A DNA stretch of 64,000 nucleotides from Iphione sp. A-MEVVRFRX5 (taxonomy: Eukaryota): the NCBI GenBank assembly GCA_976226885.1, contig OZ320316.1, positions 78,244,001-78,308,000 on the forward strand, read 5' to 3'. Every line of letters starts with the position of its first letter. Position 1 is the first letter of the stretch. The translations under genes were made by a program, and so were the position numbers. The notes under the pieces were generated by a model. It searched no databases, had not been told where the DNA came from, and saw only the letters and a program-made list of their open reading frames with translations. Shown in pieces: positions 5,955 to 64,000 of the stretch.

Positions 5955-6443
5955 AGCTTAATGAGTTGATGATGAAAATGATTAACGAAGCTTCAGTATT
6001 CAATTTCACAAGATTCTAAATGCATTATCAGCTGCGGTATCATAACTCCAACAATTCGGTGGCGTGAATAAAAGGACGTTCCTGTGAACCATAATATTGA
6101 TGGTGTTGCACTGATGTATTATGCCCAGCAGCTTACACAAATCGAGTGTAGTGATTGCTGATCAATTAGTGGTAAATTCCGATCTGTTGCATCACCTGAA
6201 TGAATATTATCAAACCACATTGATGATATTCTCTTTACCTGAGACACGCTTTCCAAGAAAAAGGGCATAACCACTTAATGAGAGCTAAAAGTGCAAAGAA
6301 TAAACATCGAGGAGCTAAACTCTGGAAATTAAGAAAATAGCATATAAGTCCATATGTGTTTTTTTCTTAAGGAGACACTGTAATGCTATTTTTTCTATTC
6401 ACCTACGTTTTAATAAAGCAATACTGAGTCAGCGATAAGATAT

Positions 6444-8385
6444 ATGAATACGATAAGTTATACTGTCAATTTTATAATTACTAGCCAATTTGAACATTTA
6501 AATTATGTTTCAAGTTGTATTGAACTGCAAGTATTACAACTGAAACCTGGCAAGTGTAAAACAACTGTCATTATTAAGGTCTATAGACCTCCATCAGGTA
6601 TCGTTAAAGATTTTATTCTTGTATTGGATCATTATTTAAAGGGAATCAATCTAAGTAGGGATGTGTATGTAGTTGGGGATGTCGATGTGAACTTATTAGA
6701 TAGTAAAGGTGCAAATGATCTGGGCCTGGTAAGACTCCTAAAAGGTTATGGTATAAGGATAGCTGCTAATACTGCCACTAGAGTGACAACTCTAAGTAGT
6801 AAACAGATTGATATAATAGCTTCAAAGTGTTATGTTAAGGATGCGGGAATAATTGACTACTGCCTCTCAGATCATCACCTAACTTATTGTATCATTGGGA
6901 AAAATAAAACAAAAATAGAACCAAATTATATTACTATTGCTTTTAGAAAGTTCAACGATGAGATAAAAAGGAGATTAATGGATGCTTTATGTGATGTTCA
7001 TTGGGAATTTTTTTATAATAGTAAAGATAGCAATGAATCCTGGAATATTATGCTAAATATTTTCCAAAAAGTACTTGATCAGATTACACTTGAGATATCA
7101 AACCAAGTTCTGTCTCAGTTGGGTATTGAATGGATTACTTCTGGCTTGATCAAACAAATTAGACTTATATAAAAAAAACGTAGACAAAGGAAAGACACCG
7201 ATACTACACGTCTTGCTAAATACCTGAAAAACCAAGTGAGAAAGTCCGTCCAGGCTCATAAGCAAAATTACATAAGGAATAAACTGGGTAACTATACCTC
7301 AGGTGAGAGAGAATACTGGAATTGATTAAAATCCATGATGGGCATTGAAATAAATAAACACAATGAGATAAATATTGATGTTGGTGGGCAACCAGTATCA
7401 AGAGATGCTATTCCCAATAAGTTCAATAGCTACTATACTGAAATAGTTGACAGGTAAGTACAATCTATTCTAAAAACTAGTGTATCAAACAATCTGCATA
7501 ATTATGGATAATAATGAAACGATCAGGGTTAAATTTAAATGTAAGAATGTAAAACAAGATGATCTAGCAAAAGTTCTTGTGAGTATTAACAATAGTAAGT
7601 CCTCTAATATACCTGGGATATCTACAAAAATATTAATTTTCTTATTTCAATGTATGATTTCACAAGTTACCCATTTAGTTAACAGAATAATGAATTTGAG
7701 CCAAGTGCCACTTCAATGGAAACAGGCGAAAGTGGTTCCAATTTATAAGGGTGCTAATAAAAGAAGAATGGAAAGTTATAGACCAATATCAGTTTTACCA
7801 TGCCCTGCAAAAATATTTGAGAAGTTAATATACATACAGACCTGTGACTATCTTGAAGCAAATTATTTATTTACTATGTCTCAGTATGGGTTTAGAAAAG
7901 AGGAACCATGGAAGCAATAATGGATGCAATGTATAATATTTTTCAAGACTGTAATGACTTTAAGCATATTAACTTGATTTTTTATGATTTATAAAAGGCC
8001 TTTGATATGGTAGATAGAAGTATACTAATTAGTAAATTACAGCAGCAATTTGCCTTCGATAGTACCACCTTGAACTTGATCTTAGTGGGAGAAAACAATA
8101 TACTGTGGTCAATGGTTGAGTTTCGGAAAAATATTTCAATAATTTTGGAGTACCCCAGGGGTCCACTTTAGAACCCCTACTCATTAGTATGAGGTGTGTG
8201 ATCGATTTGATAAATGGTGTGATACAAACAGGATTTTGATTAATGTAGATAAGAAAAAAATAATGTATATCCCCCAAAAAGAAGAAAAGAAATGAATGTT
8301 TAAGTCCTATAACAATAAAGAACCAACAGATAGAACATCTCATTGTACATGGTTTTTCATACAATAAACCTGATAACACCTTACA
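6444..8385 (+). mobile_element. Degenerate CR1/L2-type LINE ORF2 (APE endonuclease + RT)
   Basis: EN motifs VYRPPSG, VVGDVDVNLL, ATRVT..QIDII, LSDHHL (ORF 6444-7172). RT motifs WKQAKVVPIYKG..YRPISVLP..KIFEK, QYGFRK, KAFDMVD, GVPQGS (~8148). Multiple stops/frameshifts; the YADD segment appears deleted after GVPQGSTLEPLL. Confidence 0.9.
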
Positions 8386-22316: not shown

Positions 22317-22611
22317 ACTCCTGCACTACTGCAGAAGCTGCTGTCAGTAACCTGCGGCAAAATTGATATCGTCTCATGTGTAATAGACTTACTAACTTTA
22401 CGTGCAGAGTACACATTCTATCCTTATTCACAGTGGTATGACACTTAGCTATCAAAGGTCAGGTTGAGCATTAACTACTGCTTATGCACAGTAACACTAC
22501 CATGCAGGGCATATGCTGACTTCACCTTGAAAAGACATTATGACAGAACTTACTTTATCTCCAATTGAAAATATTCACAGTCATCAGTGTGCCTAACACA
22601 CAACATTACAC

Positions 22612-25564
22612 ATGGCATTCTACAGCCAAATATTAGGGCCAGAACCCCTAGGAGGTCACTTTAACTATGGTTGCAAGTCTCGAATTGCCTCAGCTCTCAC
22701 CAACGTATTAGCAGGGAAAGGCTTGAAGCAAATTGTCCTAGGTGCGACAATGGTCAATGGTAATTCTTGCCTTGACCATGTTTGGACAAGATCGGAGATC
22801 TTCTGTGAGGTGGCCATACTCGACTGGCTACTAAGCGACCACTGGCCGGTCTCCTTCCGCTTAAAGCGAGGAGTCCAGCACAAACCCTCTGAACTAGTGA
22901 CCTACAGGCCTTGGCACCTGGCAAACCTAGAACAACTGATTGATACTGTCCGTCACGAAGGCATTGTAATGACAGACAATCACTCAGACTCCTGGGATCA
23001 CTTCGCAGCGACTTGTAAAGATATGCTGCTGGATATGTGCCTACCTAAACAAAGACGTTTGAGACCTGATCAAAACAACTTTAAACTAGATGCAGTAGTA
23101 ATTGGTCTCATTAGAGACAGACAATACTTCATCAGGAAATGGAAAAATATGGGTTGTTTGGACTCAAAACGGATCATCAAATTCCTCACAAGAAGGATAA
23201 AACAGGCGATTCAAGCCAAAAAAAGACAACATTGGCAGGCCAAAATCAATGCCTCCAAAGGGAACTCAGCTGAGCTTTGGAAGATACTGAATGAGGCCCT
23301 AGGCAGGGGTAGTACTCAAAATGTACTACCTGGACAACGAAACCTGGAGACGGATGATCTAATCAAGCTCTCGAATGATTTTAACACACACTTTGTAGAC
23401 TCGGTTGCATGCCTAGCTAAACCTGCTCAGAGCAGCAGTACTATTAAAAGAGGCACGGCCAATCAGTGTTTCAAGCTGGGTGAGATCACACCTACAACAC
23501 TACGTCCTTTTGTGACCAAACTCAGAACAAACAAAGCATCTGGAATTGATGGGGTACCAAGCCGGCTGTTGAAGCACATCTTGCTAAGCTGCTTGGACTT
23601 CGTAAGCTGGCTTTTCAACAAGATTTGTGCTACTGGAACGTATCCAACAGCATGGAAGGTTGCCAGGGTCACACCTATTCATAAGAAAGGTGACCCTGAC
23701 AACCTTAGCAATTACAGGCCGGTATCCATTTTGCCAGCTCCTGGCAAGATCTGGGAATCATGGCTAGTAGCTTCTATTCACCCGTATCTACTTAAGAAGG
23801 GGGTGATTAGCAACACACAGCATGGCTTCACCCCGGGACGAAGCACTGAAACTGCAATTGCGGCAATAATCAGTCAAACCTGGGAGATGCTGAATGACAA
23901 CAGGTACTGCTGCATTATGACATTTGATCTCAGAAAAGCCTTTGACCTAGATCAACATAAACTGATTGAGTCAAGGCTTCTACAAGCTGGGGTAGGAATG
24001 GAGACACTGAGAATGATCAGAGGATATTTTTCTGACCGGGAACAGTATGTTAAACTGGGCAACTCAGTCTCTAACTTGAAGAAGCTGAAGCAAGGGGTCC
24101 CCCAGGGGTCAGTCTTAGGGCCCCTGGCATTCAACATCGCTGTTGACGAAATAGTGATGATCCTCCCACAATGCACAGTGGGCACACTGTACGCCGATCA
24201 CCTGACAGTCCTCTGCCATGGTCAGGACCTATTACATTTAAGGTCAATAGTGCAACAAACTGCCAACAGTGTCTCAAAGTGGTGCTCTGAAAATGGGTTC
24301 CTACTGAGTGAGGCAAAATGCCTACATATGCCTCTCGGAACAGCGAGTGGTCTTGACTTAGACATCCAGCTGAACAACATCAAGCTCGAAGCCACTACCA
24401 GTATCTCTTTGCTAGGATACCTGGTGGATGCAAGGCTGACCTTCAAGCCAAGCCTTGGCAATCTAAAGAAAAAAATGTGGTCTACGTCTCTCATGATCAG
24501 TAGACAGAAAAAGGTTCTCCCCTTAGGGGCCCGAAAGACGCTCCTTAAAGCGCTAGTCTGGAGCCACTTGCACTACCAGGCGCTGCTCTACTTTAGTGCA
24601 AAGAGCAGCAAGCTGAACAGCCTTCAAATTCACGCCAATAGATGCTGCAGACTAGCCGTACAAACAGGTGAGTTTCTCAGTGCTAGGCGCCTCAGAGAGA
24701 TCCTGTCAGTTAGCAAGGTAGAGGATCTGGTGAGATCCCACAGGATAAGGGCTGTGCATCGCCTTATAAAACTAGGTCACCTGGGCAAGGCACCTGTGAC
24801 CAAGACTCGCTTAGGCAGCGGCACAAAAGGTCCAAGAGGGCTGATCCTGAAACCAAAGAATGCTGCATTCTCAAGATGTCTAAGGCACAAAGGCGTCCTA
24901 GACTGGAATTCCCTTGATCCCTCTCTAAAGAGATCTGAGAAGCCCACCCTTGCTCAAATTCTAGACGCGGTTGCTCGCGCCTAAATACCTTTCCTGACTT
25001 TAGAGGGTCTGGAGGTACCTCACACACTGGGCCTAACTAACGACATATGGCTGGGAATGTATTTCAGCGACAACTGGTGAATGACTCTTGATTTCAAGAT
25101 GTGACATCAGATTATGCAGGGCTAGGGGTGGTACAGAAATTACCCAACATACATCCGCAATGTGCTGTAGCCTCGACGAATATAATGTAGCCAACTAACT
25201 CATGACCGACTGCCACAGATGACATGTTAATCTACTGGCTCCCTACTTGACTGCATACCCGAGCATCAGCTTGAGAACTAATGACAACACTCAGCAATGT
25301 TATAACTGGCTATTAAATCACATGTGTATCATGTTTTACTGCACCCTCTGCATCTGAACTAATGCACCCTGCTGAGAATTCCTGCTGCAATACTCAGGTG
25401 CTGCTAAATCGATGTCTCATCAATGTACACCTATTCGGTTTCTCCAAACTTAGTTTTCTACCTACCGTTCTTATGACATAAATTTGTCCATATATTGTGC
25501 TGTGATAACTCTGGACTTGTATTCGGAGAGGCTCAATAAAGATATTCATTCATTCATTCATTCA
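22612..25564 (+). mobile_element. 5'-truncated CR1/L2-type LINE with uninterrupted 790-codon ORF2, 3'UTR and (TTCA)n tail
   Basis: ORF 22612-24984: LDHVW..LSDHWP (EN end), YRPVSILP..KIWE, QHGF..GRST, FDLRKAFD, GVPQGSVLGP, YADH, LLGYLVD. AATAAA at 25535 followed by (ttca)5 to 25564. Confidence 0.95.
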
Positions 25565-39200: not shown

Positions 39201-42200
39201 TTTTCCTGTATTTAGCTACTCAGATATACGAAATATGCAGAATCCGAATCCGAACGGTGGTATTTCTTTAAAATTAGTTAATATTACACTCGAAATCCAA
39301 ATGCTCTGTCGATCGAGGTGAGAGTCGTTCAAAGGGTAGCGAATTGGAGGGGTACCAAGCTCGCCGCGGTCGACGGGGCCTCTCCGAAGGTGTCGATCGA
39401 GGTGAGAGCACCTCAAAGGGTAGCGAATTGGAGGGGTACCAAGCTCGCCCCCGTCGACGGGGCCTCTCCGACGGTGTCGATCGAGGTGACAGTCGCCCAA
39501 AGGGCTAGCAGGCAGCTCAGCCCAGTCGACGGGGCCTCTCAGAGGCTTCTGCGTCATCAAAGGTTAGCAAATTGGAGGGGTACCAAGCTCGCCGCGGTCC
39601 ATTATTTCAGGTTTAGATTAGATCCCATTCATTATATGATTTATTTAATTTTTATAGATATGCATGGTCAAAAGTCACTTTTTGGTTGTTTTCTCTCCAT
39701 TATTTCAGGTTTAGATTAGATCCCATTCATTATATGATTTATGTCATTCTTGTAGGGCCTGGGGCCCCCCCCTAGCTGTGAGAAATTGAAAGTGGCCTTA
39801 GGCCAGAATTCCAAATACGAATTATCCCAAATCCGAACGATTTTGGCGGAAACGGCGATCGTTCGGTTTTGGAATTCTCTCTGTATTAGCTGAAGATCAT
39901 GATATGGATCCAATTTACATGTGATATGGATAGGTCCAACAAGGTATGCCTGACGTTATTCTCTAATGCTTGTCTTCTTTCCTCAGCGTCAGACTGCAAT
40001 GTAAGACCTATAGGGCCCGAGTCTCTCTTCGGCTACGAGATTGTCAACGGGAAGCCCCACATCGGTCGGCCAGAGAGTGTCTTCCGGCTAGGGGATGGAG
40101 TGAATCCGCTACAGTACATGGGCGATAAGGAAGTGCGTGGTATTGCGTCCAGACAATGGTACTCCTGCGTTTACGATGCAGGATTCCGGGGCACTGCAAA
40201 GATGTATTGGGACTTCTCCAGTACGTAAGGAATAAGTCTTCGTAATATGGCAAAGGTTTCCTAAATAACGCTCGTTAAACAGTCGGTGTTGATCTGAAAT
40301 CCCCTTTCTGTACATGCAGACTGGTTTCAGTATAGTTAATCACCACTATCAGGAGATTCCCTGCCGCAATGCATGATAACCTGCCCCTAATGATTTCCAG
40401 TGGCTTTTTTCCATGTCATTAGATCCATCGAAATCATTCATGGGCCGGTTCAACAACACAGTACCACTCAGGGTTACAACCCAGGGAAAATTCACCAACG
40501 ATGCTGGACGCAGCATTGATTTCAACTTCGAATTTTCATTCGTTGATTTCCGACATGGTGAAGCACCCCCAGTTAGCAGATTCCAGGTGGGTACCACGCC
40601 GGCGAAACTCAAAATGCGGGAAATTGGGAAAATATCGAAAATAACAGAGACGTTAAAACACGTTAAATCATTAAAATTGTCACGTGAACAAAAACGGAGA
40701 ACCAAATCACTCTAATATGATAGAATACTTTTTAAGCCACTGATTCTATGGACAAATAGTATTTGCAATAGTCGTGTTAATTAACCGAGTAAAAGCGACA
40801 TATCACTCAAAGTATGGCTATAATTGAAATGTAAAAGGAAATTATGCTCATTTCCAGGTACCACGCGGTATTTATTGCTCCGGCATGAAAAAAGGAAGGG
40901 ATATACCTATACCACGACAAGCGTTTAGAATGAAACTAGAGACGGTAGAACCAACAGTGAAAGTATCCTCATTCATGAGCGTAAGTAAACTTAGATGGGG
41001 CAACAGTTTTTATTCAGCATTCATGCGGTACATATAGAACGGGTCCGCAACAGTCCGCACATACTATCTGAACACACAAGAAATTACATGTACATGCAAA
41101 TAATTATTCCGCCTTGGGGAAGGGTACGTAACCAGACGTAGGGTCGCCAGGGATCATTTCTACTCTGTCGATATGCATATATATACATGTACATGTATAT
41201 GTCACGTGATGCATGCAATATACCGACAGCTGGAAGGCTCGGGACATTGCCTGACCCTCAACCGTCTTCGATTACTTTCGCCACAAACACTACCATTTTA
41301 TCTGTCATGTGGGTGCACTCCATTCGTTTGCAGCAATGAAATTAAACAATTAAACAAAACTACCTTGTACTTTTCTTTGCAGCAGATAAAGTATAGATTT
41401 TTGTCCCATTTTTATTTGTCCTCCAATTTGTCGACTTTTGAAGAGAATCGCGCAAGTGGTCTGTCAATGCAAGGCTGTAGAAACATAGTGTCATTGATCT
41501 GCAAAGAAAAACAGGGAGCAACAGAAAGGAAACTTTCTTGTTGTTTCCCCTGGCTTTTTCATGCAAAGTACAAATGCACAAATAAAGAGAACAGTATAGA
41601 TGAAATGTGGATAGATTTGTCTTTCACCATGCTCTGTGCGGCTTATACATAGACCCCAAAGTTTAAATGATACACAATATATTAGTTTTGAGCTGTTCGA
41701 TGTCTCGCCTTTCTTCATTGTGCAAAGGTATCAGCAACTCCGTATGCTACTTGAGTTTTCTGTCGGAAGTTTCATCTCCGTAGTGTTGTATCCTAGATCT
41801 TCTTTGTATTAACGATCATTTCTTTATTTTTTGTCCATGTCTCCTGCTTTTCTATCTATTTTTCAGAACTGTTGTTTACACGAATAGCTGCATCCAACCC
41901 TTTTAGGTTTTAAGGCTAAATTTCATCTGGGCATGTTTTAGCAGGTGTGTTGGCATGTTTCTGGCATGTTTTTTGGTAAATATCTAAATACACACGTGTG
42001 TTTCCATTTAAGAATACGCCGTGTTGCATGTTTTCACAGGAATGTAGCTGTGTTTTCAAAATGGAAAATGTTCCATTTTTCATAGTGACGTGCTGCGTGT
42101 TCTATATATTTACAGATAAAGTAAGATTAAAAAATCATGTTACCTGTGATTTATGTAAAAAAAGAATATATTACCACACATTTATAGCAAATTACCACAG

Positions 42201-45200: not shown

Positions 45201-48200
45201 CCTTGCATTTCTTTGATATACTCTTATACAGTCGAAAGCCTATTTGCAACCACATCGATTTGTGACCATTCTCTATTTGTGACAATGAGAGGTGGGTACC
45301 AAAATCCTGATATGTATATATTTGAACCCCTATTTGCAACCAAATCTGCTAATGTGACCACTTGAGCTTGGGTCCCAAGTAATGATCACAAATAAGTTTC
45401 GACTATATAATGTTGTTCACAAATATTGTTTCCCTTTTCAACTGATTCCTGCTGAAGGATTCTACATTGGTAGTGCCTATTCTTGTTATAATTATATCTT
45501 TTTTGTTTTCTCACAACTATACTGGAAATTTATTAACCTAGTTGGTCTATTTTGCACATGATTTTAAACCTTATTTATATAATTCTGTATCTCTTAAATG
45601 GGAAAGATTAATTAACTAGGATATATGTGATGCTTAAATGAACATGGTGAACAGGTTTCTCCTGACAAGGTTTCAGAGGATAGGTACAATGTATTAATGT
45701 TAGTGGATATAAATATGTATACGCATGTACAGTAGCAACTCACCTTGAGGGCAACTCAGCTAAGAGGGCAACTCATGAATAAGGACAATTTTTTGGTCCC
45801 ATAGGTATATTTTATACAATATAACAACTCAGGTAGGAGAGCAACTCGCAGTTAAGGGCAGTTTTGTCTGGTCCCATTGGTGGTCTTAATTCTGAGCTGC
45901 TACTGAAAATATATCGTTGGCTTCCACCAAAGTAAAGACGACTTGGAATACGTTTTGATGGTTGTTTATTGCAAAATGGTAGAAGAGCAATTACAAAAAT
46001 TCTTTGCAACTCACACATATTTATACTGACAGTTCCCACACTCCACTAGTCTAGTTCCCTCCCTCTGCACATAACCCCTCTGATAAATTACCCTCCACTA
46101 TTTCCCTCTGTGGTCCTCTGCCCAACAATATGTATCTATGTGTGTACATGTAAATGTAAGCATATACTGACCCTCGTGGCAATTGACACATCACTGTGTG
46201 ACAGGATGACATGTTTTACAGTCATGATACCTGTCAATCAAAGTGTTCCATAGCCAATGACGTTATGGTATTTTGTCACATGACTTGTGTAACCAATCAA
46301 TGCAGACAACATTTGAGCAACACTGTCACTTGTGTGTGACCGTATTATAATTATGACTGTCACATATTATGTGGTTATGTTAATGTATAGACATTATATC
46401 CATTGAGAACATGCTGAAGCATCTATATAATTTCAAAGTCTATGAGAAAGTGCAGTACACTAATACTATAACTAGAAACCTCTTTTTTTAATATTGTACG
46501 TGACCGTAATGAAAGTATAACTGTCACATTGTGATGAGTGGGCATGGCTACATGACAGTATGGCGATGTGTCGATTGCAAAGTGTTATTTTCACTAATAA
46601 CATTTTCCACCTATGCATTACTTTTAGGAGTGGTACGACTACCAATGGAAACTCGTCCGCTTCGACTATAAACCTGTATTCGGAGGCAAATGGGGTTTTA
46701 ATCCTGTTCGACAGGTGCACGACTTCAATACAGGTGAGACTCTTTAAGAAAACGAATTCGTTTCACCACGCTTTAATGCGACATATCAGACTGCTACTGT
46801 CGTCAGACCCCGCCTGTTACTGTCTTCTCATCTTTGCACTTATAATACAAGAAATTATATTTTGGAATTAGGTGTTGCATATGTGATTGACAAGGAGCTG
46901 GGTAACTGCACGGCCCTTCCCATCAGCCAGTCAAGTACAGATGCTGGAAGGAATGAGAAGGACAGAAATCTCGTCCGGATAAAGACAGTTTCTGAACTTT
47001 TCTTCTTGAACGCCAAGTATACGTACATTGGGCAGGTATGGAATGCTAGGAGAGTAGTAGCATCTATTTAACCTCAGACTAGTCTCCGTTTCATACATCT
47101 ATATCTTATCAGTGTGCCTGCTTCCGCGTAAAACTTCCTTTCGACAAAGCCATTTCTTTGCTAAATCGAGAGAACTTAAATCAAGAGATAACGGTGTTAA
47201 AAGACCTACGCGATTGAATAGTGTAGCGTATGAGGAAGACTGGAAGTCTTCAGCCAGTTGCAGAATACTATTATATATCACACATATCATATCTATTCAT
47301 TAGATAATCACAATGTAGTACATCTGATTCTTTTACATCGACAGTAAATACCATAATAAAACACTTGGTGAGTTATGCATGCTGCAGCAGTATCGAAATA
47401 GCATACTGAAAAAACATATGTGTGTGAGTGATTTGTGGCACCAAGATTTATAGACATGTCTTTGGCCTGTACTGTGTGCAGAAAGCATGGAAGCATTATG
47501 GAAAAGCTGTCGGAAATTGCCTCGGATTCAAACACCCAACAGAAAGGTCAATTGCTGTAGGACAAAAGACGTCCCTTGCAAATGAAAGGAGACCACTCGA
47601 ATCAGATTGGTCGGCATTAAGTAATTTACTGACGTGAAATGATAATTGCCAATTCCAGTCGAAATGTTCTGTCGCCCACTTTTAACCTTGAGATGGTGCG
47701 GGACGAACGCTACGAAACGTACAGTACTGTGTATGTTCCAGAGAATCGTGCGCGGGATCAAATGTGACACTTGGAACGCCCTCATCCGTCGCCCAAAGTA
47801 TAACTCTACTTACATTTATGAATGGCACTTTGCCTCCGTAAGTTTCCAACTGACAGTATTTGTATATGAAATGTCCAAAAGTTTTTACGGTTTTGTGTTT
47901 ATGCTATAAAGTTTTACGCTTTATCTCCTCCCATAAAGTACTTAAAACTGGCTCACTTCAATTCACTTACGATTTTTAAGCCTGTGAAGGCATTGTGCTT
48001 CAAATAGAAAAGAGCCGTCGTTCTGGGCAGGGAGACCATGAAAAAAATGCACTGTAGTTACTCAAGGTTCCAGTCCTTTTAGGATGGCATGTCCCATTCA
48101 GTTTCGTCCTGATATTCATAATTGATTGAATAATTCCACTCGCACTTATGGGGAAGTTTATTTGTTTAAAACGTTTGATTATTTGATAAAACCTACAAAC

Positions 48201-51200
48201 ATAAATCTCCTGGTAAAAGCCACCTCCATGCTGCTTAACTGGATATTTTATGTGTGCTTTCCGCAGTCGGAATGGGCGGACGGCAGCACTGGTGCCAGGA
48301 TTCAGCAGGGAGCACCGGTCATGTTGGAAACGATTATACAAGAGGTGAGTTCGTACTCACCGTTCGCGTGGCTGACAAACATGTGTAAACACTAGGGTAG
48401 CATCAAATCAAGCAGAGAAGGTATCCAGAGAAATGCATACATAACATTTGAAATTGCATTGAGAACATGATCCCTGTCCGTGCTGTTGGGGCGTCAGGGA
48501 ATTTGACCGTAGTAGGAAGGGCTGCACGTTTTTGTCAGAAGATTTTCCCCTGACCCTAATGGAAGCGACAATTCATATCATGACTTTTAGCGAAGTCCAC
48601 GAGTATGAAATTACTTTAGACATGCTGCCATGGATGTTTTTTGCTTTATTTTCATTTGGGTGTGGCGTAGTTTTCTTTGGCAAGAAAAAATTATGCTTTA
48701 TGTGAATTAGTTGAGGTTGTACCCGAGTTCTGCTCCTTAGTTGAGGTTGCACCAGAGTTCTGCTCCAGAAACGTCCTGCTCCACAAGTATCTAAGATAAT
48801 GGTACTGACTGACTATTAAATTATTTTATTTCTAATTCTCTCCAGAATTGTCCATGCACTTTACTGTATTTTTCACTGGTCTGACCATTAGATTTTATTA
48901 ACATGTATCCATTCCTTTCCATGTGTACCTGTAGTATGAATTCCCATCCATCTATCACGTATTTGACTACGTTGAAGAGAGACCTGATTTTGGAGCATAC
49001 CGGATCGGTAAATGCTACGCTAACCTACGCAGAATCGATTATCGATTTGATCTAGCCGGTAAGTCCATGAAGGGTATATTTTTTTCTTTCCTTTCTAAAT
49101 GGAAACCAAATATGCACGTCTTCAGCTGGCGCGATGATAATTTCACGCAACCTCAGCCGGAAAAATTCTAAGCGGTCTCTGACAGTAAGTGTACAGTCTT
49201 TCCCGTATTTCGGCTCCTCAACAACCGGATTCCCTCATTTTCTTGAATAAAAACAATGTGGTCCGAGATCACAAATCAATGTAGTTTCCCTGAACAACCG
49301 GATTCTACAGTGACAGAAAACACCTGTTGATGAGATTTGACTGTCGATGAATAATTGTTATTAATAATTATGTAATCAATAATGTTATTAACCTACTTAC
49401 ATGCGTACACATAACTGTGTGCAAGCACACAATGCATCCATAAATAGACCCCCTGAGGGCTGTACGTTTTTTGCTCAAACGAACTGTTCAGTAACTAAAT
49501 GTTTATGGAAGGACTTTATTGCCACTTTTCAATTATTGTTTCTGCACTACTCTTAGCTGTAGAAGCAAGTAAAATATGAAGCATGACAATGCCTGAAATT
49601 TTCAATGATTTTAAAGTGACTTCGATGTTGTTTCTCAATTGCTCTGTGGGAATTAACCCACCCTCCTGGTTGTCTTTGTTCTGGGGTGGCCCAAACCGAG
49701 GTTTTATTGCAGGCCCGTGACCAGGACGTTTTCTGGGGGGTATCGGATGATACCCCATAGGTGGAACTAATTTTGTTCTTACCTCTATGAAAGCCTGTTG
49801 GCATTACTGTTTTGGGAGGTATCGGATGATACTCTCTATACCCCCTTGGCTACGGGCCTGTATTGTACATCATATTCATCTCTATATCAGTGCATACACA
49901 TAAATATCTAACGCCACAGCTAATTATTGGATCACCAAGTTCCTCAACATACACAGACAGGGACTTGGAAATCGTTTTATCCAAACCAAGTTGGATTAAT
50001 CTTTCAACACCTACGAGCTTGTAGTTATACACATATACGCAGAGCCACCATTTCTTAGCAAAATGGGGCGGTTAAGCATTACAGCAGTTAATCCAATCAG
50101 TCAGCTCTTTACTTGTAGTTCCATTCATCGTGATTTTTCTACATGCTCCTCAGGTCCTTATAGCAGGATAGCAGGACCGAATCCAAATATATTCAAGTAT
50201 GATGTCAGGGCTACAGTTATGAGTAAAGCTGGCGGAATATCACCTCTTCGAGTTAACGATATACAGGTAAGTAACATATTTATAAATGGCGTTAAACACT
50301 AACAGTGATTTCCTATTTACAGCAAACAAATAGTGTGAATAAACTTAAGAATTACGATGTATATTTCACATTGAAACTCATTTTCCTGCTGTTTTCTGAG
50401 ACTTTGTAGTTTACAGGAAACTTCAGTCCATGCGGTATTGTCTACATGAGAGTTGACTGTATTTCCAGGTTTCCTCGGAGAACAGTGGCCAACAAATTAG
50501 AATACAGTTCAATCTACTCGATGTGGCACCTGTGAAGGGCAGTGTAGCCAATGCCGATCCTGAGGTCACTTTAGAAGCTGCCAGTGCATCACTCAATAAT
50601 GCCATCCGCAATAATCAGTTCATCGTTTATTGGAAGCCAGACGATACAACCGTGAGCAATCTCACCAATTCATTAAATATCTTTTCTCGTTGCACTTTGG
50701 ATAAAAGCAATATATATGTAGATGCTAACATTATATGGTTTTATGTACCACGTAACTTTCGTTTCGTTGGTACTAGAAATATTTTTGTAAGGTGCAACCA
50801 ATCATTTAAACCTCCATAAGAGAACTCACTTATTCCAGTGTTTCCTGATATGATCAAACAAAGGATGGCAGTCAGCACTCACCATCATTTAAAAATGTAA
50901 GTTATCAGTGTGAAGCAAGAAACCTCCTTTGCGCTCTTTCGAAATCTTCATTTCAGACGCTCGAATTGCCAGCCATTCCTGGAAGTCTTACTGTATCGGG
51001 AATACAATATGGTCAGATTCCGTCTAAGACAAAGGCAACAGGCTATTCATCAGGTGAGTCTCCGGGTATCCACACAGAACACTCAAGAGGAAAATGTTTC
51101 ACATAAAAGAATGAACAGTGCTATCCTGGCTTGTTTAAGATGTACATGTAAAATACGTAAACAAATGTTTGACACATAGTTGGATAACAGCGCAATAGTT

Positions 51201-52446
51201 ATCAGGACAATATCTCTCCTAGCTCAGGGTAAATATAAATGATAATACAGCAATATTATGTGTGCTCAAAAACCAAATGGTGCATATACTCGTTTCATTA
51301 TTCTTAGTATGATACCATGCATTGATATTGCACGAAAGTAGCCATATGGTACACTCCCCCTCCTGGAACCATTTCTCCTGCGACTATTTTTTCCGGGACC
51401 TTCTTCCAACGCAGTTATATCTACGACCTTGCCGACTGCTAATTAGCATGTTTGGCAGTACGAATCTGGCCCTTTGTTCAGAACTTGATACGTTGGCCAT
51501 TTATTCCTACTGTGTAATTATTTTAACTGAAATTGAATGGTTATTACCAGCGACATTAACCATTTGCATTTATATTGTCATCTGACATCCTTAGCCACCC
51601 ATTTACAAGTATAAATTGGTTGTGACTCTTTTAAATTATATCTTCAAGTCATCCGACATGATTAATCTAATAGTATGTATATATATCGTCGTTATACACA
51701 AACACAAGTTCAGAATATAATCACTAAGCCACACCTACTTGCGCTACTGCATCTAGCGGCACCGTCAGACTCTCATAACTGCATGAGTGTTGTCTTTCAG
51801 TTGGAATTTACCGTTTGTACATACAATCCAAGTGACATGCTGCAAAAGCTCCTTTCAGTAGGCCTATTAGTCCCTGTACTCCTAACGATGCGCGTGACCT
51901 TGTTATAATACATGTAAGAAGGAAGATCCAGTAGACATTAGGAAAGAGGCCTGGTTACCACACAAAGATTGCCCAACGCTTCTGCTCGTTAAATTTGGTT
52001 CATTCCAACTGACTGACTCATGCGCTTATGACAGGTGCGATGGCCGCCCTAGCCCTTGGTATGATCTTGCTTGGCATTCTGTCCGGCACGGGACTGGCGT
52101 ATTGGTTCTTCTTCATAAGGACGTGATCTTTCCATCACAGGTAGGACCGCTAGTGGGGTAAAATATAGCATGAATTACACAGTTAACTGCACTCTGTCAC
52201 TTCTGCGCAGCAGCGCAAGGAGCAGTAGTAGAAAGTCCTTCCCATCAAATGTCATAGTGGCATCCAATTGTTATATTTATCTATTTAATTTCAGGGGCAA
52301 TGGCTGCCGTCGCTATTGCTATGATAATCCTCGGTCTCATCATTGGTGTGGCAGTGGTCTTTGTCATAGGTTTCCTGACTGGTAAGAAGATGCCCATCAT
52401 ACCTGCCAGGGCTTCTCCTGGCTTTGCCCCTCAACGTTTTGATTAG
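33234..52446 (+). CDS. Multi-exon gene: secreted type-I membrane protein with two tandem ependymin/EPDR (LolA-fold)-like repeats, SEA-like segment and alternative TM exons
   Basis: 14 shared exons (1834 nt) plus TM exon A (92 nt) or B (152 nt); all introns GT-AG, all phases match, no internal stops; 641 or 661 aa. EPDR-like motifs YD...VRFDY, HDFNTGVAYVIDKELGNC, YIGQRIVRGIKCDTW, FQVPRGIYC. Confidence 0.88.
33886..33977 (+). CDS. Exon 2 (signal peptide core VLFLSFLAAATA-QWNPQVC)
   Basis: cacag acceptor, G|GTATAG donor, phase 2 to 1; hydrophobic stretch ending in A-T-A. Confidence 0.88.
35368..35571 (+). CDS. Exon 3 (PMPPAVPRSWHSKVEI...YVAFIME)
   Basis: ctcctttag acceptor, A|GTACGT donor, phase 1 to 1. 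Confidence 0.9.
35945..36700. repeat. TG/TA-rich low-complexity degenerate repeat in intron 3
   Basis: Repeating gtgtatagatgt/gtatgtgtc words; explains ORFs 36232-36525 and 36244-36474. Confidence 0.9.
37856..38032. mobile_element. MITE (TA TSD), same family as 26073-26250
   Basis: ta-cagttgagtctctatttatgacc ... ggtcgtaaatagagattccactg-ta. Confidence 0.88.
38750..38774. repeat. (GATA)n microsatellite
   Basis: Six GATA units. Confidence 0.95.
39126..39883. mobile_element. TA-flanked TIR element carrying an 84-bp CpG-rich tandem repeat
   Basis: ta-cagagaagactccaattccgaac ... gttcggttttggaattctctctg-ta; internal units start at 39309, 39393, 39477; 46-bp direct duplication at 39598 and 39696. 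Confidence 0.8.
39987..40220 (+). CDS. Exon 4 (SDCNVRPI...QYMGDKEVRGIASRQW...YWDFS)
   Basis: ttcctcag acceptor, A|GTACGT donor, phase 1 to 1. Confidence 0.92.
40423..40586 (+). CDS. Exon 5 (PSKSF...VPLRV...FSFVDFR...RFQ)
   Basis: ttttttccatgtcattag acceptor, CAG|GTGGGT donor, phase 1 to 0. Confidence 0.88.
40858..40980 (+). CDS. Exon 6 (VPRGIYC...VSSFMS)
   Basis: tttccag acceptor, GTAAGT donor, 123 nt, phase 0 to 0. Confidence 0.9.
42205..42420. repeat. Degenerate ~32-bp minisatellite
   Basis: Periodic atttttggccgaatttt/ccatgtaattt motifs resembling 25590 and 27270. Confidence 0.7.
42653..42830. mobile_element. MITE (CAGTAGC termini); inverted near-copy of 54959-55140
   Basis: cagtagcgacctgcataa ... 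gtcgagttgctactg-ta; its reverse complement aligns end to end with 54959-55140. Confidence 0.9.
45229..45405. mobile_element. MITE (TA TSD, CAGTCGAAA termini)
   Basis: ta-cagtcgaaagcctatttgcaacc ... gatcacaaataagtttcgacta-ta. Confidence 0.75.
45730..45905. mobile_element. MITE (CAGTAGCAACTC termini)
   Basis: ta-cagtagcaactc ... gagctgctactg; internal gggcaactc repeats. Confidence 0.75.
46628..46733 (+). CDS. Exon 7 (EWYDYQWKLVRFDY...HDFNT)
   Basis: ttttag acceptor, G|GTGAGA donor, phase 0 to 1. Confidence 0.92.
46872..47035 (+). CDS. Exon 8 (GVAYVIDKELGNC...YTYIGQ)
   Basis: aattag acceptor, CAG|GTATGG donor, phase 1 to 0. Confidence 0.92.
47742..47837 (+). CDS. Exon 9 (RIVRGIKCDTW...YEWHFAS)
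   Basis: gttccag acceptor, GTAAGT donor, phase 0 to 0. Confidence 0.92.
48267..48344 (+). CDS. Exon 10 (SEWADG...GAPVMLETIIQE)
   Basis: tttccgcag acceptor, GAG|GTGAGT donor, phase 0 to 0. Confidence 0.9.
48935..49058 (+). CDS. Exon 11 (YEFPSIYHVFDY...KCY...FDLA)
   Basis: cctgtag acceptor, G|GTAAGT donor, phase 0 to 1. Confidence 0.88.
49710..49860. mobile_element. Short TIR element (CAGGCCCGT termini) with apparent 5-bp TSD TATTG
   Basis: tattg-caggcccgtgaccagg ... ccttggctacgggcctg-tattg. Confidence 0.75.
50154..50266 (+). CDS. Exon 12 (GPYSRI...GISPLRVNDIQ; SEA-like)
   Basis: ctcctcag acceptor, CAG|GTAAGT donor, phase 1 to 0. Confidence 0.9.
50469..50651 (+). CDS. Exon 13 (VSSE...IQFNLLDVAPVKG...KPDDTT)
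   Basis: atttccag acceptor, GTGAGC donor, phase 0 to 0. Confidence 0.9.
50957..51053 (+). CDS. Exon 14 (TLELPAIPGSL...TGYSS)
   Basis: tcatttcag acceptor, G|GTGAGT donor, phase 0 to 1. Confidence 0.88.
52035..52126 (+). CDS. Alternative TM exon A (GAMAALALGMILLGILSGTGLAYWFFFIRT*)
   Basis: atgacag acceptor, phase 1, hydrophobic helix, TGA at 52124-26; CAG|GTAGGA donor 14 nt after the stop. Confidence 0.78.
52295..52446 (+). CDS. Alternative TM exon B (GAMAAVAIAMIILGLIIGVAVVFVIGFLTGKK...PGFAPQRFD*)
   Basis: tttaatttcag acceptor, phase 1, hydrophobic helix followed by KK, TAG at 52444-46; AATAAA at 52991. Confidence 0.85.
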
Positions 52447-53402
52447 GTAGCTCCACACAATGTTCTTCAGTCAGCAAAGGGCGATGTAGAGGTTTCTTCT
52501 CTACAGCGAATATTGTTAACACAAGTCATCACTGAGTTATTTCAATCGAAGATTTCTTCAGCAAAAACATCTTGAATGATCAGTGAAACAGTTTATGTAT
52601 ATATATATTCAGCTACAATTCATCGGTCACGTTTTTGAGTGGCAGGTGAGTCTAGCCAACCACCGTGCATTCGCTGAAAAGTGTAGGGGTTTGAACCATA
52701 GACAAACAAATCTGTCTAGCATTGGACTCAATGGGAAGTTAAAATTCTGTCTTAGTATTATAGGTTTGTCTTTTGTATGCATAAAAGGACATATTGATAA
52801 TAATTCAAATCAACTTTGGTATTTTTCCAATTCATAGTTCTCAAGTTACAAGGGCTCAAAGTTTAGTGTTTTAGCATTGCAAAGGCCTAGGGAGGCTGCA
52901 GGATGTCAATGCCGAAAGCACGTCAGAGACTCTCCTGCGTGGGAGGAGTTATCTGCCCCAAAGCAATCGGTGAATTAGAATTACTTGTGCAATAAAAGCT
53001 TTTGGTTTTTAACCAAGAGTTGAATTAAATCCTCGCTAAAATGTGCAATGTTAGAAAGTAATTCACATAATCGTGCATTGAAATATTTATCATAGTATTT
53101 CGCCGTGTGGCTGCTGCCATGATCCGTTTGTGTCATTGTAAGAGATGTACACTTTAGCAGGCATTATTTCGATCTATTTCTAAGATCAGAAATAAATTAT
53201 AGCCATCGAATATCTAGTGGCGCAAACACTTGCCAAAAAATACGTTTATCTCGATTATATTGTCATCACTGTCGTGTTTAATCAATGTATGCCGAAAATG
53301 TACAGGTAAGCAGCCATCATTGTTAATAGGTACTGCTTTTGCTGCATTCAATAAATTTATATTTCAAATAATACTAGTGGAATTTAAGTTATTTATGGAA
53401 AA

Positions 53403-63199: not shown

Positions 63200-64000
63200 C
63201 TAGAGGGTATCCATAGTTAGCATCTCGATTCGGGGATCAGCGTTCTTCCGGAGTTGCGAGTGTAGCAAGCCCTTCTGTTTTGCTGCTAAATCGTCGACCA
63301 TCATCTGGAGGACCTCAAGTTCTGTATCCGAAATCGGGTCGTCACCGTGTTGTTCCACTAATGTGACTAGATGTTGCACCGCAGCATTGTGACATTCTAC
63401 CTCGTAGTTGTTGTTAGCTTCATGTAGGCCCCAATCACCGAGTTTGCCGGGCCGATGGGCCCCCGGGAGTAGCAGCCACGGGCGGTCTCTCAGGGGCTTG
63501 AGAGGATCTCCGATAACTAGGGGCCCCTCACTCGTCGCAGTGGTAGTGGCCATGGAGAGAGAGACAGCATACTTCTGCTCTGGAGAAAACCATTCCCAGC
63601 CCTCGGGTGGCCAGGTAACGTTCGGTGACACTGACACAGCCTGGGAGGGTATCCTTCTGACGACGCCGCAGAAGGGTCGCACCAGACCATCCGCCGTGGC
63701 CCCTACCCACTTACGGAATGCTGGGGACACTTGCTGTCCCATTCCAGCCTCGGATGGTACAGGTCGGGGCGATATGTCTTCACTCTGGTGATGCTGTGTC
63801 CCACTGACTGAAAGTTCGGTTGACTCAGGCGCTTTCGGAGGAGGTGTGCTATCCTTCTTCTGGGACAACGATAGCATCACTTCCTCTTTATCCTTTCCAG
63901 GCTGAGATGCTGGTGGCTGTTTTGGAGGACTTTGCCCGTTTGCCACGCTCACCGTTTCATCGTTCAAGGGTGATCCCCTCGGAGGAGAGGTCGGTACTTC
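63200..64000 (-). CDS. Intronless GC-rich ORF of unknown function, N-terminus beyond window edge
   Basis: Frame is open from 64000 to the stop at 63200 (the track's start at 63967 is a TTG); Pro/Ser-rich N-part followed by a globular-looking part with VTWPPEGWEWFSPEQK and WLLLPG. Confidence 0.55.
   Translation of the reverse strand, partial: EVPTSPPRGSPLNDETVSVANGQSPPKQPPASQPGKDKEEVMLSLSQKKDSTPPPKAPESTELSVSGTQHHQSEDISPRPVPSEAGMGQQVSPAFRKWVGATADGLVRPFCGVVRRIPSQAVSVSPNVTWPPEGWEWFSPEQKYAVSLSMATTTATSEGPLVIGDPLKPLRDRPWLLLPGAHRPGKLGDWGLHEANNNYEVECHNAAVQHLVTLVEQHGDDPISDTELEVLQMMVDDLAAKQKGLLHSQLRKNADPRIEMLTMDTL

What the first reader, a model, noticed from the sequence alone, without database searches (positions are those of the whole stretch)
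52035..52446. Duplicated transmembrane exons acting as a cytoplasmic-tail switch on an EPDR-like protein
Seen: two tandem phase-1 exons each encode a full TM helix. 10 of the first 15 residues are identical (GAMAAxAxxMIxLG), yet 7 of the 8 identical non-Met residues use different third-position codons, the pattern expected if both copies are under purifying selection. Exon A ends with a 2-residue tail (RT*); exon B has a ~22-residue tail ending PGFAPQRFD*. A donor sits 14 nt after A's stop, so A could splice onto B as 3'UTR; by the established ~50-nt rule that would escape NMD. Inference: one ectodomain is shipped with either a tail-less anchor or a tail carrying a possible sorting signal (aromatic motifs at the extreme C-terminus as in lysosomal/endosomal membrane proteins), giving splice-controlled localisation. 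I am not aware of this being described for this family.
Basis: partly seen in the sequence, partly recalled or inferred. Interest (0 to 1): 0.72.

Follow-up and report, generated by a model that had tools for sequence, protein, structure and literature searches.

The report
Ancient twin membrane-anchor exons, worm gene
A worm gene for a surface protein with two lipid-pocket (ependymin-like) domains has two copies of its membrane-anchor exon, one with almost no inner tail and one with a 20-residue tail; both have been kept by selection since before annelids and ribbon worms split, but what the choice does in the cell is untested.

Summary
Exon A (52035-52126) and exon B (52295-46) follow AG acceptors in the same phase. 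Both map to the same positions of the family profile. They are more alike than chance allows (10 of 15 anchored residues, shuffle p = 5e-6).

Comparative evidence supports the idea that both are used. A related genome (L028/L029) has both exons intact, with dN/dS of 0.09 (A) and 0.14 (B) while the flanking introns are randomised. Two ribbon worms have the same A-then-B layout. Tubulanus is annotated with both isoforms.

The ectodomain is ependymin-like in fold only (Foldseek E 4e-8 to EPDR1). By sequence it belongs to an uncharacterised metazoan family (PF25898 + PF25899).

Three things were not shown:
- Use of either exon in this species, because no RNA run was listed.
- Escape from nonsense-mediated decay.
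- Any effect on localisation. The B tail has a conserved GF-x-P-x-R motif but no canonical sorting signal.

This is a new member of a known kind: tandem-duplicated alternative exons, as in Dscam1 exon 17.

The parts
33902..33973 (+). Possible first coding exon (signal-peptide region). Weak evidence.
   Evidence: Weak match to family profile positions 8-31 (iE 1.5). Boundaries not resolved.
35368..35571 (+). Exon, start of the first LolA/EPDR-like domain
   Evidence: AG acceptor and GT donor, phase 1 in and out. Profile positions 37-103.
39987..40220 (+). Exon, core of the first LolA/EPDR-like domain
   Evidence: Profile positions 104-184, iE 5.5e-21. This was the query that retrieved the family.
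40423..40586 (+). Exon, end of the first domain
   Evidence: Phase-compatible acceptor at 40423 and donor CAG|GTGGGT at 40586. Profile positions 179-239.
40846..40977 (+). Linker exon between the two domains (approximate bounds)
   Evidence: Profile positions 235-278, iE 9e-8. tblastn of homologues also hits it.
46628..47035 (+). Two exons (46628-46733 and 46872-47035) at the start of the second LolA/EPDR-like domain
   Evidence: Splice sites and phases read. Profile positions 280-370.
47739..49072 (+). Three further exons of the second domain (about 47739-47837, 48225-48344 and 48947-49058)
   Evidence: Profile matches and strong donors at 47837, 48344 and 49058. Acceptors not all resolved.
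50154..50651 (+). Two exons (50154-50266 and 50469-50651) of the juxtamembrane DUF7959 domain
   Evidence: Splice sites read. Profile positions 462-572, iE 1.9e-13 for the second exon.
50957..51053 (+). Last common exon (stalk ending G-Y-S-S-G); its donor leaves one spare base
   Evidence: The stalk motif is shared with Lottia, Tubulanus and Lineus.
52035..52140 (+). Exon A: a 106-nt cassette exon encoding a membrane helix plus a two-residue tail. Stop at 52124-52126, donor GT at 52141.
   Evidence: dN/dS is 0.09 against the relative L028. It has the A-type hallmark, an aromatic cluster followed by a basic residue, shared with nemertean and mollusc exons.
52141..52294 (+). Intron between A and B, with no AATAAA or ATTAAA
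   Evidence: Identity to the relative is at shuffle level.
52295..52446 (+). Exon B coding part: a membrane helix plus a 20-residue tail ending PGFAPQRFD. It is 3'UTR when A is included.
   Evidence: dN/dS is 0.14 against L028. The tail motif is shared with Lottia and partly with Tubulanus.
52447..53010 (+). Likely 3'UTR up to the first AATAAA (52991-52996)
   Evidence: Sequence read. This is an inference; no transcript data.

Best explanation
The window holds one roughly 19-kb gene, from about 33.9k to 53.0k on the + strand. It encodes a type I membrane protein with two tandem LolA/ependymin-like lipid-pocket domains, a juxtamembrane DUF7959 domain, a short stalk and one membrane helix. The exon for the helix was duplicated in tandem before annelids and nemerteans diverged. 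The upstream copy (A) lost its tail and ends in a stop codon that sits just before its own donor site. The downstream copy (B) keeps a 20-residue cytoplasmic tail. If the 106-nt exon A is included, translation stops in A and B becomes 3'UTR, giving an anchor-only protein. If A is skipped, B is read and the protein carries the tail. So a single cassette-exon decision yields two proteins with the same ectodomain but different helices and tails. Shown here: homology of the exons, purifying selection on both, the same layout in other phyla, and both mRNA forms in other species. Inferred: that this species uses both exons, that the A-included mRNA escapes decay, and that the tail changes trafficking or partner binding.
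For: Homologues align colinearly from 39.9k to 52.1k, and the family profile maps exons in order from position 8 to 624. A and B are homologous (p = 5e-6) and occupy the same profile positions. A related genome (ENA assembly ERZ25767047, L028/L029) has both exons intact, 2.4 kb apart. For A, dN is 0.13, dS 1.38 and omega 0.09. For B, dN is 0.25, dS 1.78 and omega 0.14. Flanking introns are 0.60 identical against 0.57 for shuffled sequence. In Tubulanus polymorphus, isoforms X2 and X1 differ only by A-type versus B-type ends, and the exons lie A then B, 70 nt apart. Lineus longissimus is annotated with B and has an intact, unannotated A-type exon in its last intron. The spliced contig L027 has a 642-codon frame ending in an A-type exon, and a B-type exon starts about 6 nt after the stop. 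A GT donor lies -1 to +14 nt from A's stop in all four genomes with the pair, and none has AATAAA between A and B. The profile scan finds exactly two copies in these loci and one in the mollusc and echinoderm loci.
Against: There is no transcript evidence for this species: no RNA run was listed and no transcript contig carries its exon B. The Tubulanus isoforms are database predictions whose read support I could not inspect. Many molluscs keep only the A type (oyster, Haliotis, Babylonia; the scallop protein also ends in an A-type exon, but its locus was not scanned). Lottia and the echinoderms keep only a tailed exon, so either form can suffice alone. Assigning A-to-A and B-to-B orthology from the helix core alone is weak: mean identities are 9.5 and 9.7 against 7.6 of 22 positions. 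The assignment rests mainly on the C-terminal hallmarks and the shared exon order.
Confidence: 0.8

Rival explanations
1. Exon B is the only functional anchor, and exon A is an unused, decaying duplicate in the last intron.
For: Lineus is annotated with B only. A's acceptor has the weaker pyrimidine tract, 12 against 14 of 20. An open frame of 30 codons is not significant by itself.
Against: A has omega 0.09 against the relative while the introns are randomised. A keeps the aromatic-cluster-plus-basic hallmark shared with molluscs and nemerteans. A-type ends are the expressed form in L027 and in Tubulanus X2.
Confidence: 0.05
2. Exon A is constitutive, and exon B is only 3'UTR sequence that still looks like an exon.
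For: The L027 mRNA carries B as 3'UTR. Many molluscs manage with A alone.
Against: B has omega 0.14, with saturated synonymous sites and an intact 50-codon frame in both species. Its tail motif is shared with Lottia, where it is coding. Tubulanus X1 and the Lineus protein read B.
Confidence: 0.05
3. A and B are alternative last exons with separate polyadenylation sites, rather than a cassette exon followed by a common terminal exon.
For: The relative has a 2.4-kb A-B interval containing one ATTAAA.
Against: There is no AATAAA or ATTAAA in the 168-nt interval of the window, nor in Tubulanus or Lineus. A donor next to A's stop is conserved in all four genomes. The L027 mRNA joins A to B.
Confidence: 0.08
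4. The likeness of A and B is a chance resemblance between two hydrophobic helices.
For: Membrane helices share a biased composition.
Against: The anchored, composition-preserving shuffle gives p = 5e-6. The exons share phase and profile positions, and the same pair is present in other phyla.
Confidence: 0.01

Closest known systems
Dscam1 exon 17 cluster of insects (two alternative transmembrane exons)
   Same: Both have two tandem, homologous exons that each encode the whole membrane helix of a type I surface protein, chosen by splicing and conserved across many species (PMC8042237). From my own knowledge, not checked here: the two Dscam1 forms are sorted to dendrites or axons.
   Different: In Dscam1 the exons are strictly mutually exclusive and are followed by common cytoplasmic exons. 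Here both exons can sit in one mRNA, exclusivity comes from a stop codon in the upstream copy, and the copies also decide whether there is a tail at all. The protein family is unrelated.
Tandem duplicated exon substitution events (surveyed in human genes)
   Same: They are rare, mostly ancient duplicated exons whose alternative use gives isoforms that differ only in a homologous segment (PMC9741552 and PMC8373072, abstracts seen).
   Different: Those events swap exons of equal frame inside the coding region. Here the upstream copy is 106 nt, terminates translation, and turns the downstream copy into 3'UTR.
Cassette exon with a stop codon that selects between two cytoplasmic tails (CD46 CYT-1/CYT-2; from my own knowledge, not checked here)
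   Same: Inclusion of a short exon carrying a stop gives one tail, and skipping it lets the next exon supply the other tail.
   Different: In CD46 only the tail differs and the two exons are not duplicates. Here the membrane helix itself is swapped.
Ependymin-related proteins (EPDR1/MERP)
   Same: They share the LolA-like fold with a hydrophobic pocket (PMC6363788 and PMC6608618). The family model's best structural matches are EPDR1 crystal structures.
   Different: EPDR proteins are single-domain, soluble, secreted or lysosomal proteins of about 200 residues that match Pfam PF00811. This family has two such domains plus DUF7959 and a membrane anchor, and it does not match PF00811. The same genome has four ordinary intronless EPDR genes elsewhere.

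Membership tests
Ependymin (Pfam PF00811) | Sequence match to the Ependymin model above its cut-off | tested here: not met
   A six-frame search of the whole genome finds four good matches on other contigs and none in this window at E <= 10. No Pfam hit on single exons or on eight full-length homologues. The profile search of PDB sequences finds no EPDR1.
Ependymin (Pfam PF00811) | LolA-like fold | tested here: met
   Tested on a homologue, not on the window protein. The AlphaFold model of Haliotis P0014 has pLDDT 77. The top Foldseek matches are EPDR1 structures 6jl9 and 6e8n (E 4e-8 to 9e-8, TM about 0.6 by target), followed by LolA, RseB and VioE.
Ependymin (Pfam PF00811) | Soluble single-domain protein of about 200 residues | tested here: not met
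   The protein has two domains plus DUF7959 and a membrane helix.
Metazoan LolA_2nd_metazoa + DUF7959 family (PF25898, PF25899) | Colinear match to a profile of proteins that carry these two Pfam labels | tested here: met
   A profile of 17 such proteins matches the window exons in order from position 8 to 624, with the best exon at iE 5.5e-21. The Pfam labels are precomputed ones shown.
Metazoan LolA_2nd_metazoa + DUF7959 family (PF25898, PF25899) | Direct score against the Pfam models themselves | not testable with these tools
   Both accessions are missing from the local Pfam copy.
Tandem-duplicated alternative exons | Adjacent exons that are homologous and share the same phase | tested here: met
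Tandem-duplicated alternative exons | Both copies kept by purifying selection | tested here: met
   Omega is 0.09 and 0.14 against L028, with randomised introns. The same pair is present in two nemerteans.
Tandem-duplicated alternative exons | Transcripts of this species that use each copy | not testable with these tools
   No RNA run was listed, so read laying could not be used.
Tandem-duplicated alternative exons | Strict mutual exclusion within one mRNA | tested here: not met
   The L027 mRNA carries both copies. Exclusion acts at the protein level through A's stop codon.

The most novel reading that the evidence does not exclude
The A/B choice is an ancient switch, more than 500 million years old. 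It turns a lipid-binding, ependymin-like surface receptor either into an anchor-only form or into a form whose conserved GF-x-P-x-R-F tail recruits a still unknown cytoplasmic adaptor for uptake or signalling. The stop-next-to-donor design would be kept to protect the A mRNA from decay.
Probability: 0.2. Interest if true: 0.6.

Novelty: new member of a known kind. Interest (0 to 1): 0.45.

Why it matters
The finding gives a clean, deeply conserved example of how a duplicated exon can switch both the membrane helix and the presence of a cytoplasmic tail with a single splicing decision. It does so in a widespread invertebrate protein family on which I found no paper. The conserved helix (Gly at fixed spacing) and the conserved tail motif are concrete handles for finding partners of these two-domain ependymin-like receptors. 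The unannotated A exon in Lineus, and the pair found here, show that current annotations miss the second isoform.

Tried and rejected
- An exact look-up of the exon-B mini-frame found no contig.
- Pfam on single exons and on homologues gave nothing.
- PF25898 and PF25899 are not in the local library.
- The profile search of PDB sequences gave only insignificant hits of the helix to the DAP12 helix (E 0.5).
- tblastx between the two halves of the gene did not show the two domains as repeats. Their kinship shows only through the family profile.
- No B-type exon lies within 8 kb downstream in Haliotis, Babylonia or oyster. No A-type exon lies in the Lottia, Strongylocentrotus or Patiria loci.
- The second metatranscriptome family member (L030-L032) has no second helix copy in its 3'UTR.
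- Paper searches for the family's identifiers found nothing.
Exons were searched singly by reference, and the fold was made on the Haliotis homologue.
- I built no tree of the ectodomains, so which mollusc or nemertean gene is the strict orthologue of this one is not settled.

Full report
**What is in the sequence**

The last common exon, 50957-51053, ends CAG|GTGAGT and leaves one spare base. Two exons follow, each after an AG acceptor.

- Exon A starts at 52035 and encodes 30 residues: a membrane helix plus I-R-T. Its stop is at 52124-52126.
- Exon B starts at 52295 and encodes 50 residues: a helix, two lysines and an 18-residue remainder ending PGFAPQRFD. Its stop is at 52444-52446.

Ten of the first 15 residues agree, and 7 of the 8 identical non-Met residues use different codons. 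A GT donor lies 14 nt after A's stop. With the alignment anchored at the exon start and composition kept, shuffling gives p = 5e-6 for this identity. The stretch is single copy in the 1.18-Gb genome.

**The gene**

One exon (39989-40219) was searched against 1.84 billion proteins. It retrieved a family of 570-660-residue proteins from sea urchins, a starfish, gastropods, bivalves and nemerteans. Their precomputed Pfam labels are PF25898 (LolA_2nd_metazoa) and PF25899 (DUF7959). These models are not in the local Pfam copy.

The homologues align colinearly with the window from 39.9k to 52.1k. A profile of 17 members maps the window's exons in order from profile position 8 to 624. Exons A and B both fall on positions 596-624. 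This is therefore one gene of about 19 kb.

An AlphaFold model was made of the Haliotis homologue instead (pLDDT 77). Its best structural matches are EPDR1 crystal structures, followed by LolA, RseB and VioE.

"EPDR-like" thus holds for the fold. By sequence the gene does not match the Ependymin model, whereas four ordinary intronless EPDR genes elsewhere in this genome do.

**Are both exons kept by selection?**

A search with the exon-B frame found a 67-residue product, 69% identical, on two contigs of ENA assembly ERZ25767047. These loci (L028/L029) hold both exons intact, 2.4 kb apart instead of 168 nt. Nei-Gojobori estimates against the window are as follows.

| Exon | dN | dS | omega |
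|---|---|---|---|
| A | 0.13 | 1.38 | 0.09 |
| B | 0.25 | 1.78 | 0.14 |

The 150-nt flanks are 0.59-0.61 identical, against 0.57 for shuffled sequence.

**Other phyla**

- *Tubulanus polymorphus* is annotated with two isoforms that differ only at the end. X2 has an A-type helix and no tail. X1 has a B-type helix and a tail. In its locus the exons lie A then B, 70 nt apart, and a GT follows A's stop directly.
- *Lineus longissimus* is annotated with B only. An intact A-type exon, with acceptor, stop and an adjacent donor, lies in its last intron.
- A-type exons share an aromatic cluster followed by one basic residue at the very end. This is also the only form in oyster, three Haliotis genes and Babylonia, where no B copy lies within 8 kb. 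The scallop protein also ends in an A-type exon, but its locus was not fetched.
- Lottia has a single exon with the B-type tail motif, nearly the same as in the window.
- Sea urchin and starfish have a single tailed exon with a different motif.
- Two paralogues in this genome (C10 near 77.19 Mb and C2 near 69.29 Mb) each have a single tailed exon.
- A profile scan finds exactly two helix copies in the window, Tubulanus, Lineus and L028/L029, and exactly one in the mollusc and echinoderm loci.

Earlier notes of this scan call the genome an annelid. I did not test that. If it is right, the duplication predates the annelid-nemertean split, and one copy was later lost in several mollusc genes.

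**How the switch works**

Contig L027 from a JGI sample carries an uninterrupted 642-codon frame of this family, whose genes elsewhere have a dozen introns. It is therefore a spliced mRNA or derived from one. Its frame ends in an A-type exon. About 6 nt after the stop a complete B-type exon begins, out of frame, as 3'UTR.

In all four genomes with the pair, a GT donor lies between -1 and +14 nt from A's stop. None has AATAAA between A and B. A is therefore a cassette exon of 106 nt in the window. Including it ends translation in A. Skipping it lets B be read. The two outcomes exclude each other at the protein level, not in the mRNA.

**What is not shown**

- No RNA run could be listed for this species, so its use of either exon is inferred.
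- Escape from nonsense-mediated decay rests on a vertebrate rule.
- The B tail has a conserved motif (GF, any residue, P, Q/K/S, R) but none of the canonical sorting signals. A role in localisation is one possibility among others, such as partner binding through the helix, whose glycines at fixed spacing are conserved family-wide.

**Comparison and verdict**

The closest known case is the pair of alternative transmembrane exons of insect Dscam1. More broadly it resembles ancient tandem-duplicated exon substitutions. The twist here is a stop codon in the upstream copy and reuse of the downstream copy as 3'UTR. It is a real, deeply conserved feature and a new member of a known kind. Interest is moderate.

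Noticed in passing
window 22597-24981 (+): An intact 795-codon open frame with a reverse-transcriptase domain (PF00078, E 2e-26), probably a non-LTR retrotransposon lying upstream of the gene. Further long frames at 6417-7917 gave no Pfam hit.
   Followed up: partly
window 28780-29630, with an N run at 29161-29292: A purine-rich simple repeat that reads as Arg/Glu/Gly-rich or Ser/Leu/Pro-rich frames on the two strands, interrupted by a 132-base run of N. The N run was left as it is.
   Followed up: no
G000:C10:77193100-77206500 (-) and G000:C2:69265900-69292100 (+); loci L019-L026: Two paralogues of the same family in this genome. Each has a single tailed membrane exon. The C2 copy has the echinoderm-like P-Y-x-V-Q tail.
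   Followed up: partly
L014:11574-11656 (Lineus longissimus): An intact A-type membrane exon that the GenBank annotation of LOC135498987 does not use.
   Followed up: yes
P0019 (Strongylocentrotus purpuratus LOC580499 isoform X2): An annotated 553-residue isoform ends before the membrane helix. Sea urchins may therefore also make a soluble form of this family by alternative splicing.
   Followed up: no
Family profile positions 589-616 (the membrane helix): The only PDB sequence hits of the family profile are to the DAP12/TYROBP membrane helix, at E 0.5, which is not significant.
   Followed up: no
window 63203-64000 (-): A 266-codon open frame runs off the window's end. It has no Pfam match and is probably an exon of a neighbouring gene.
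   Followed up: partly
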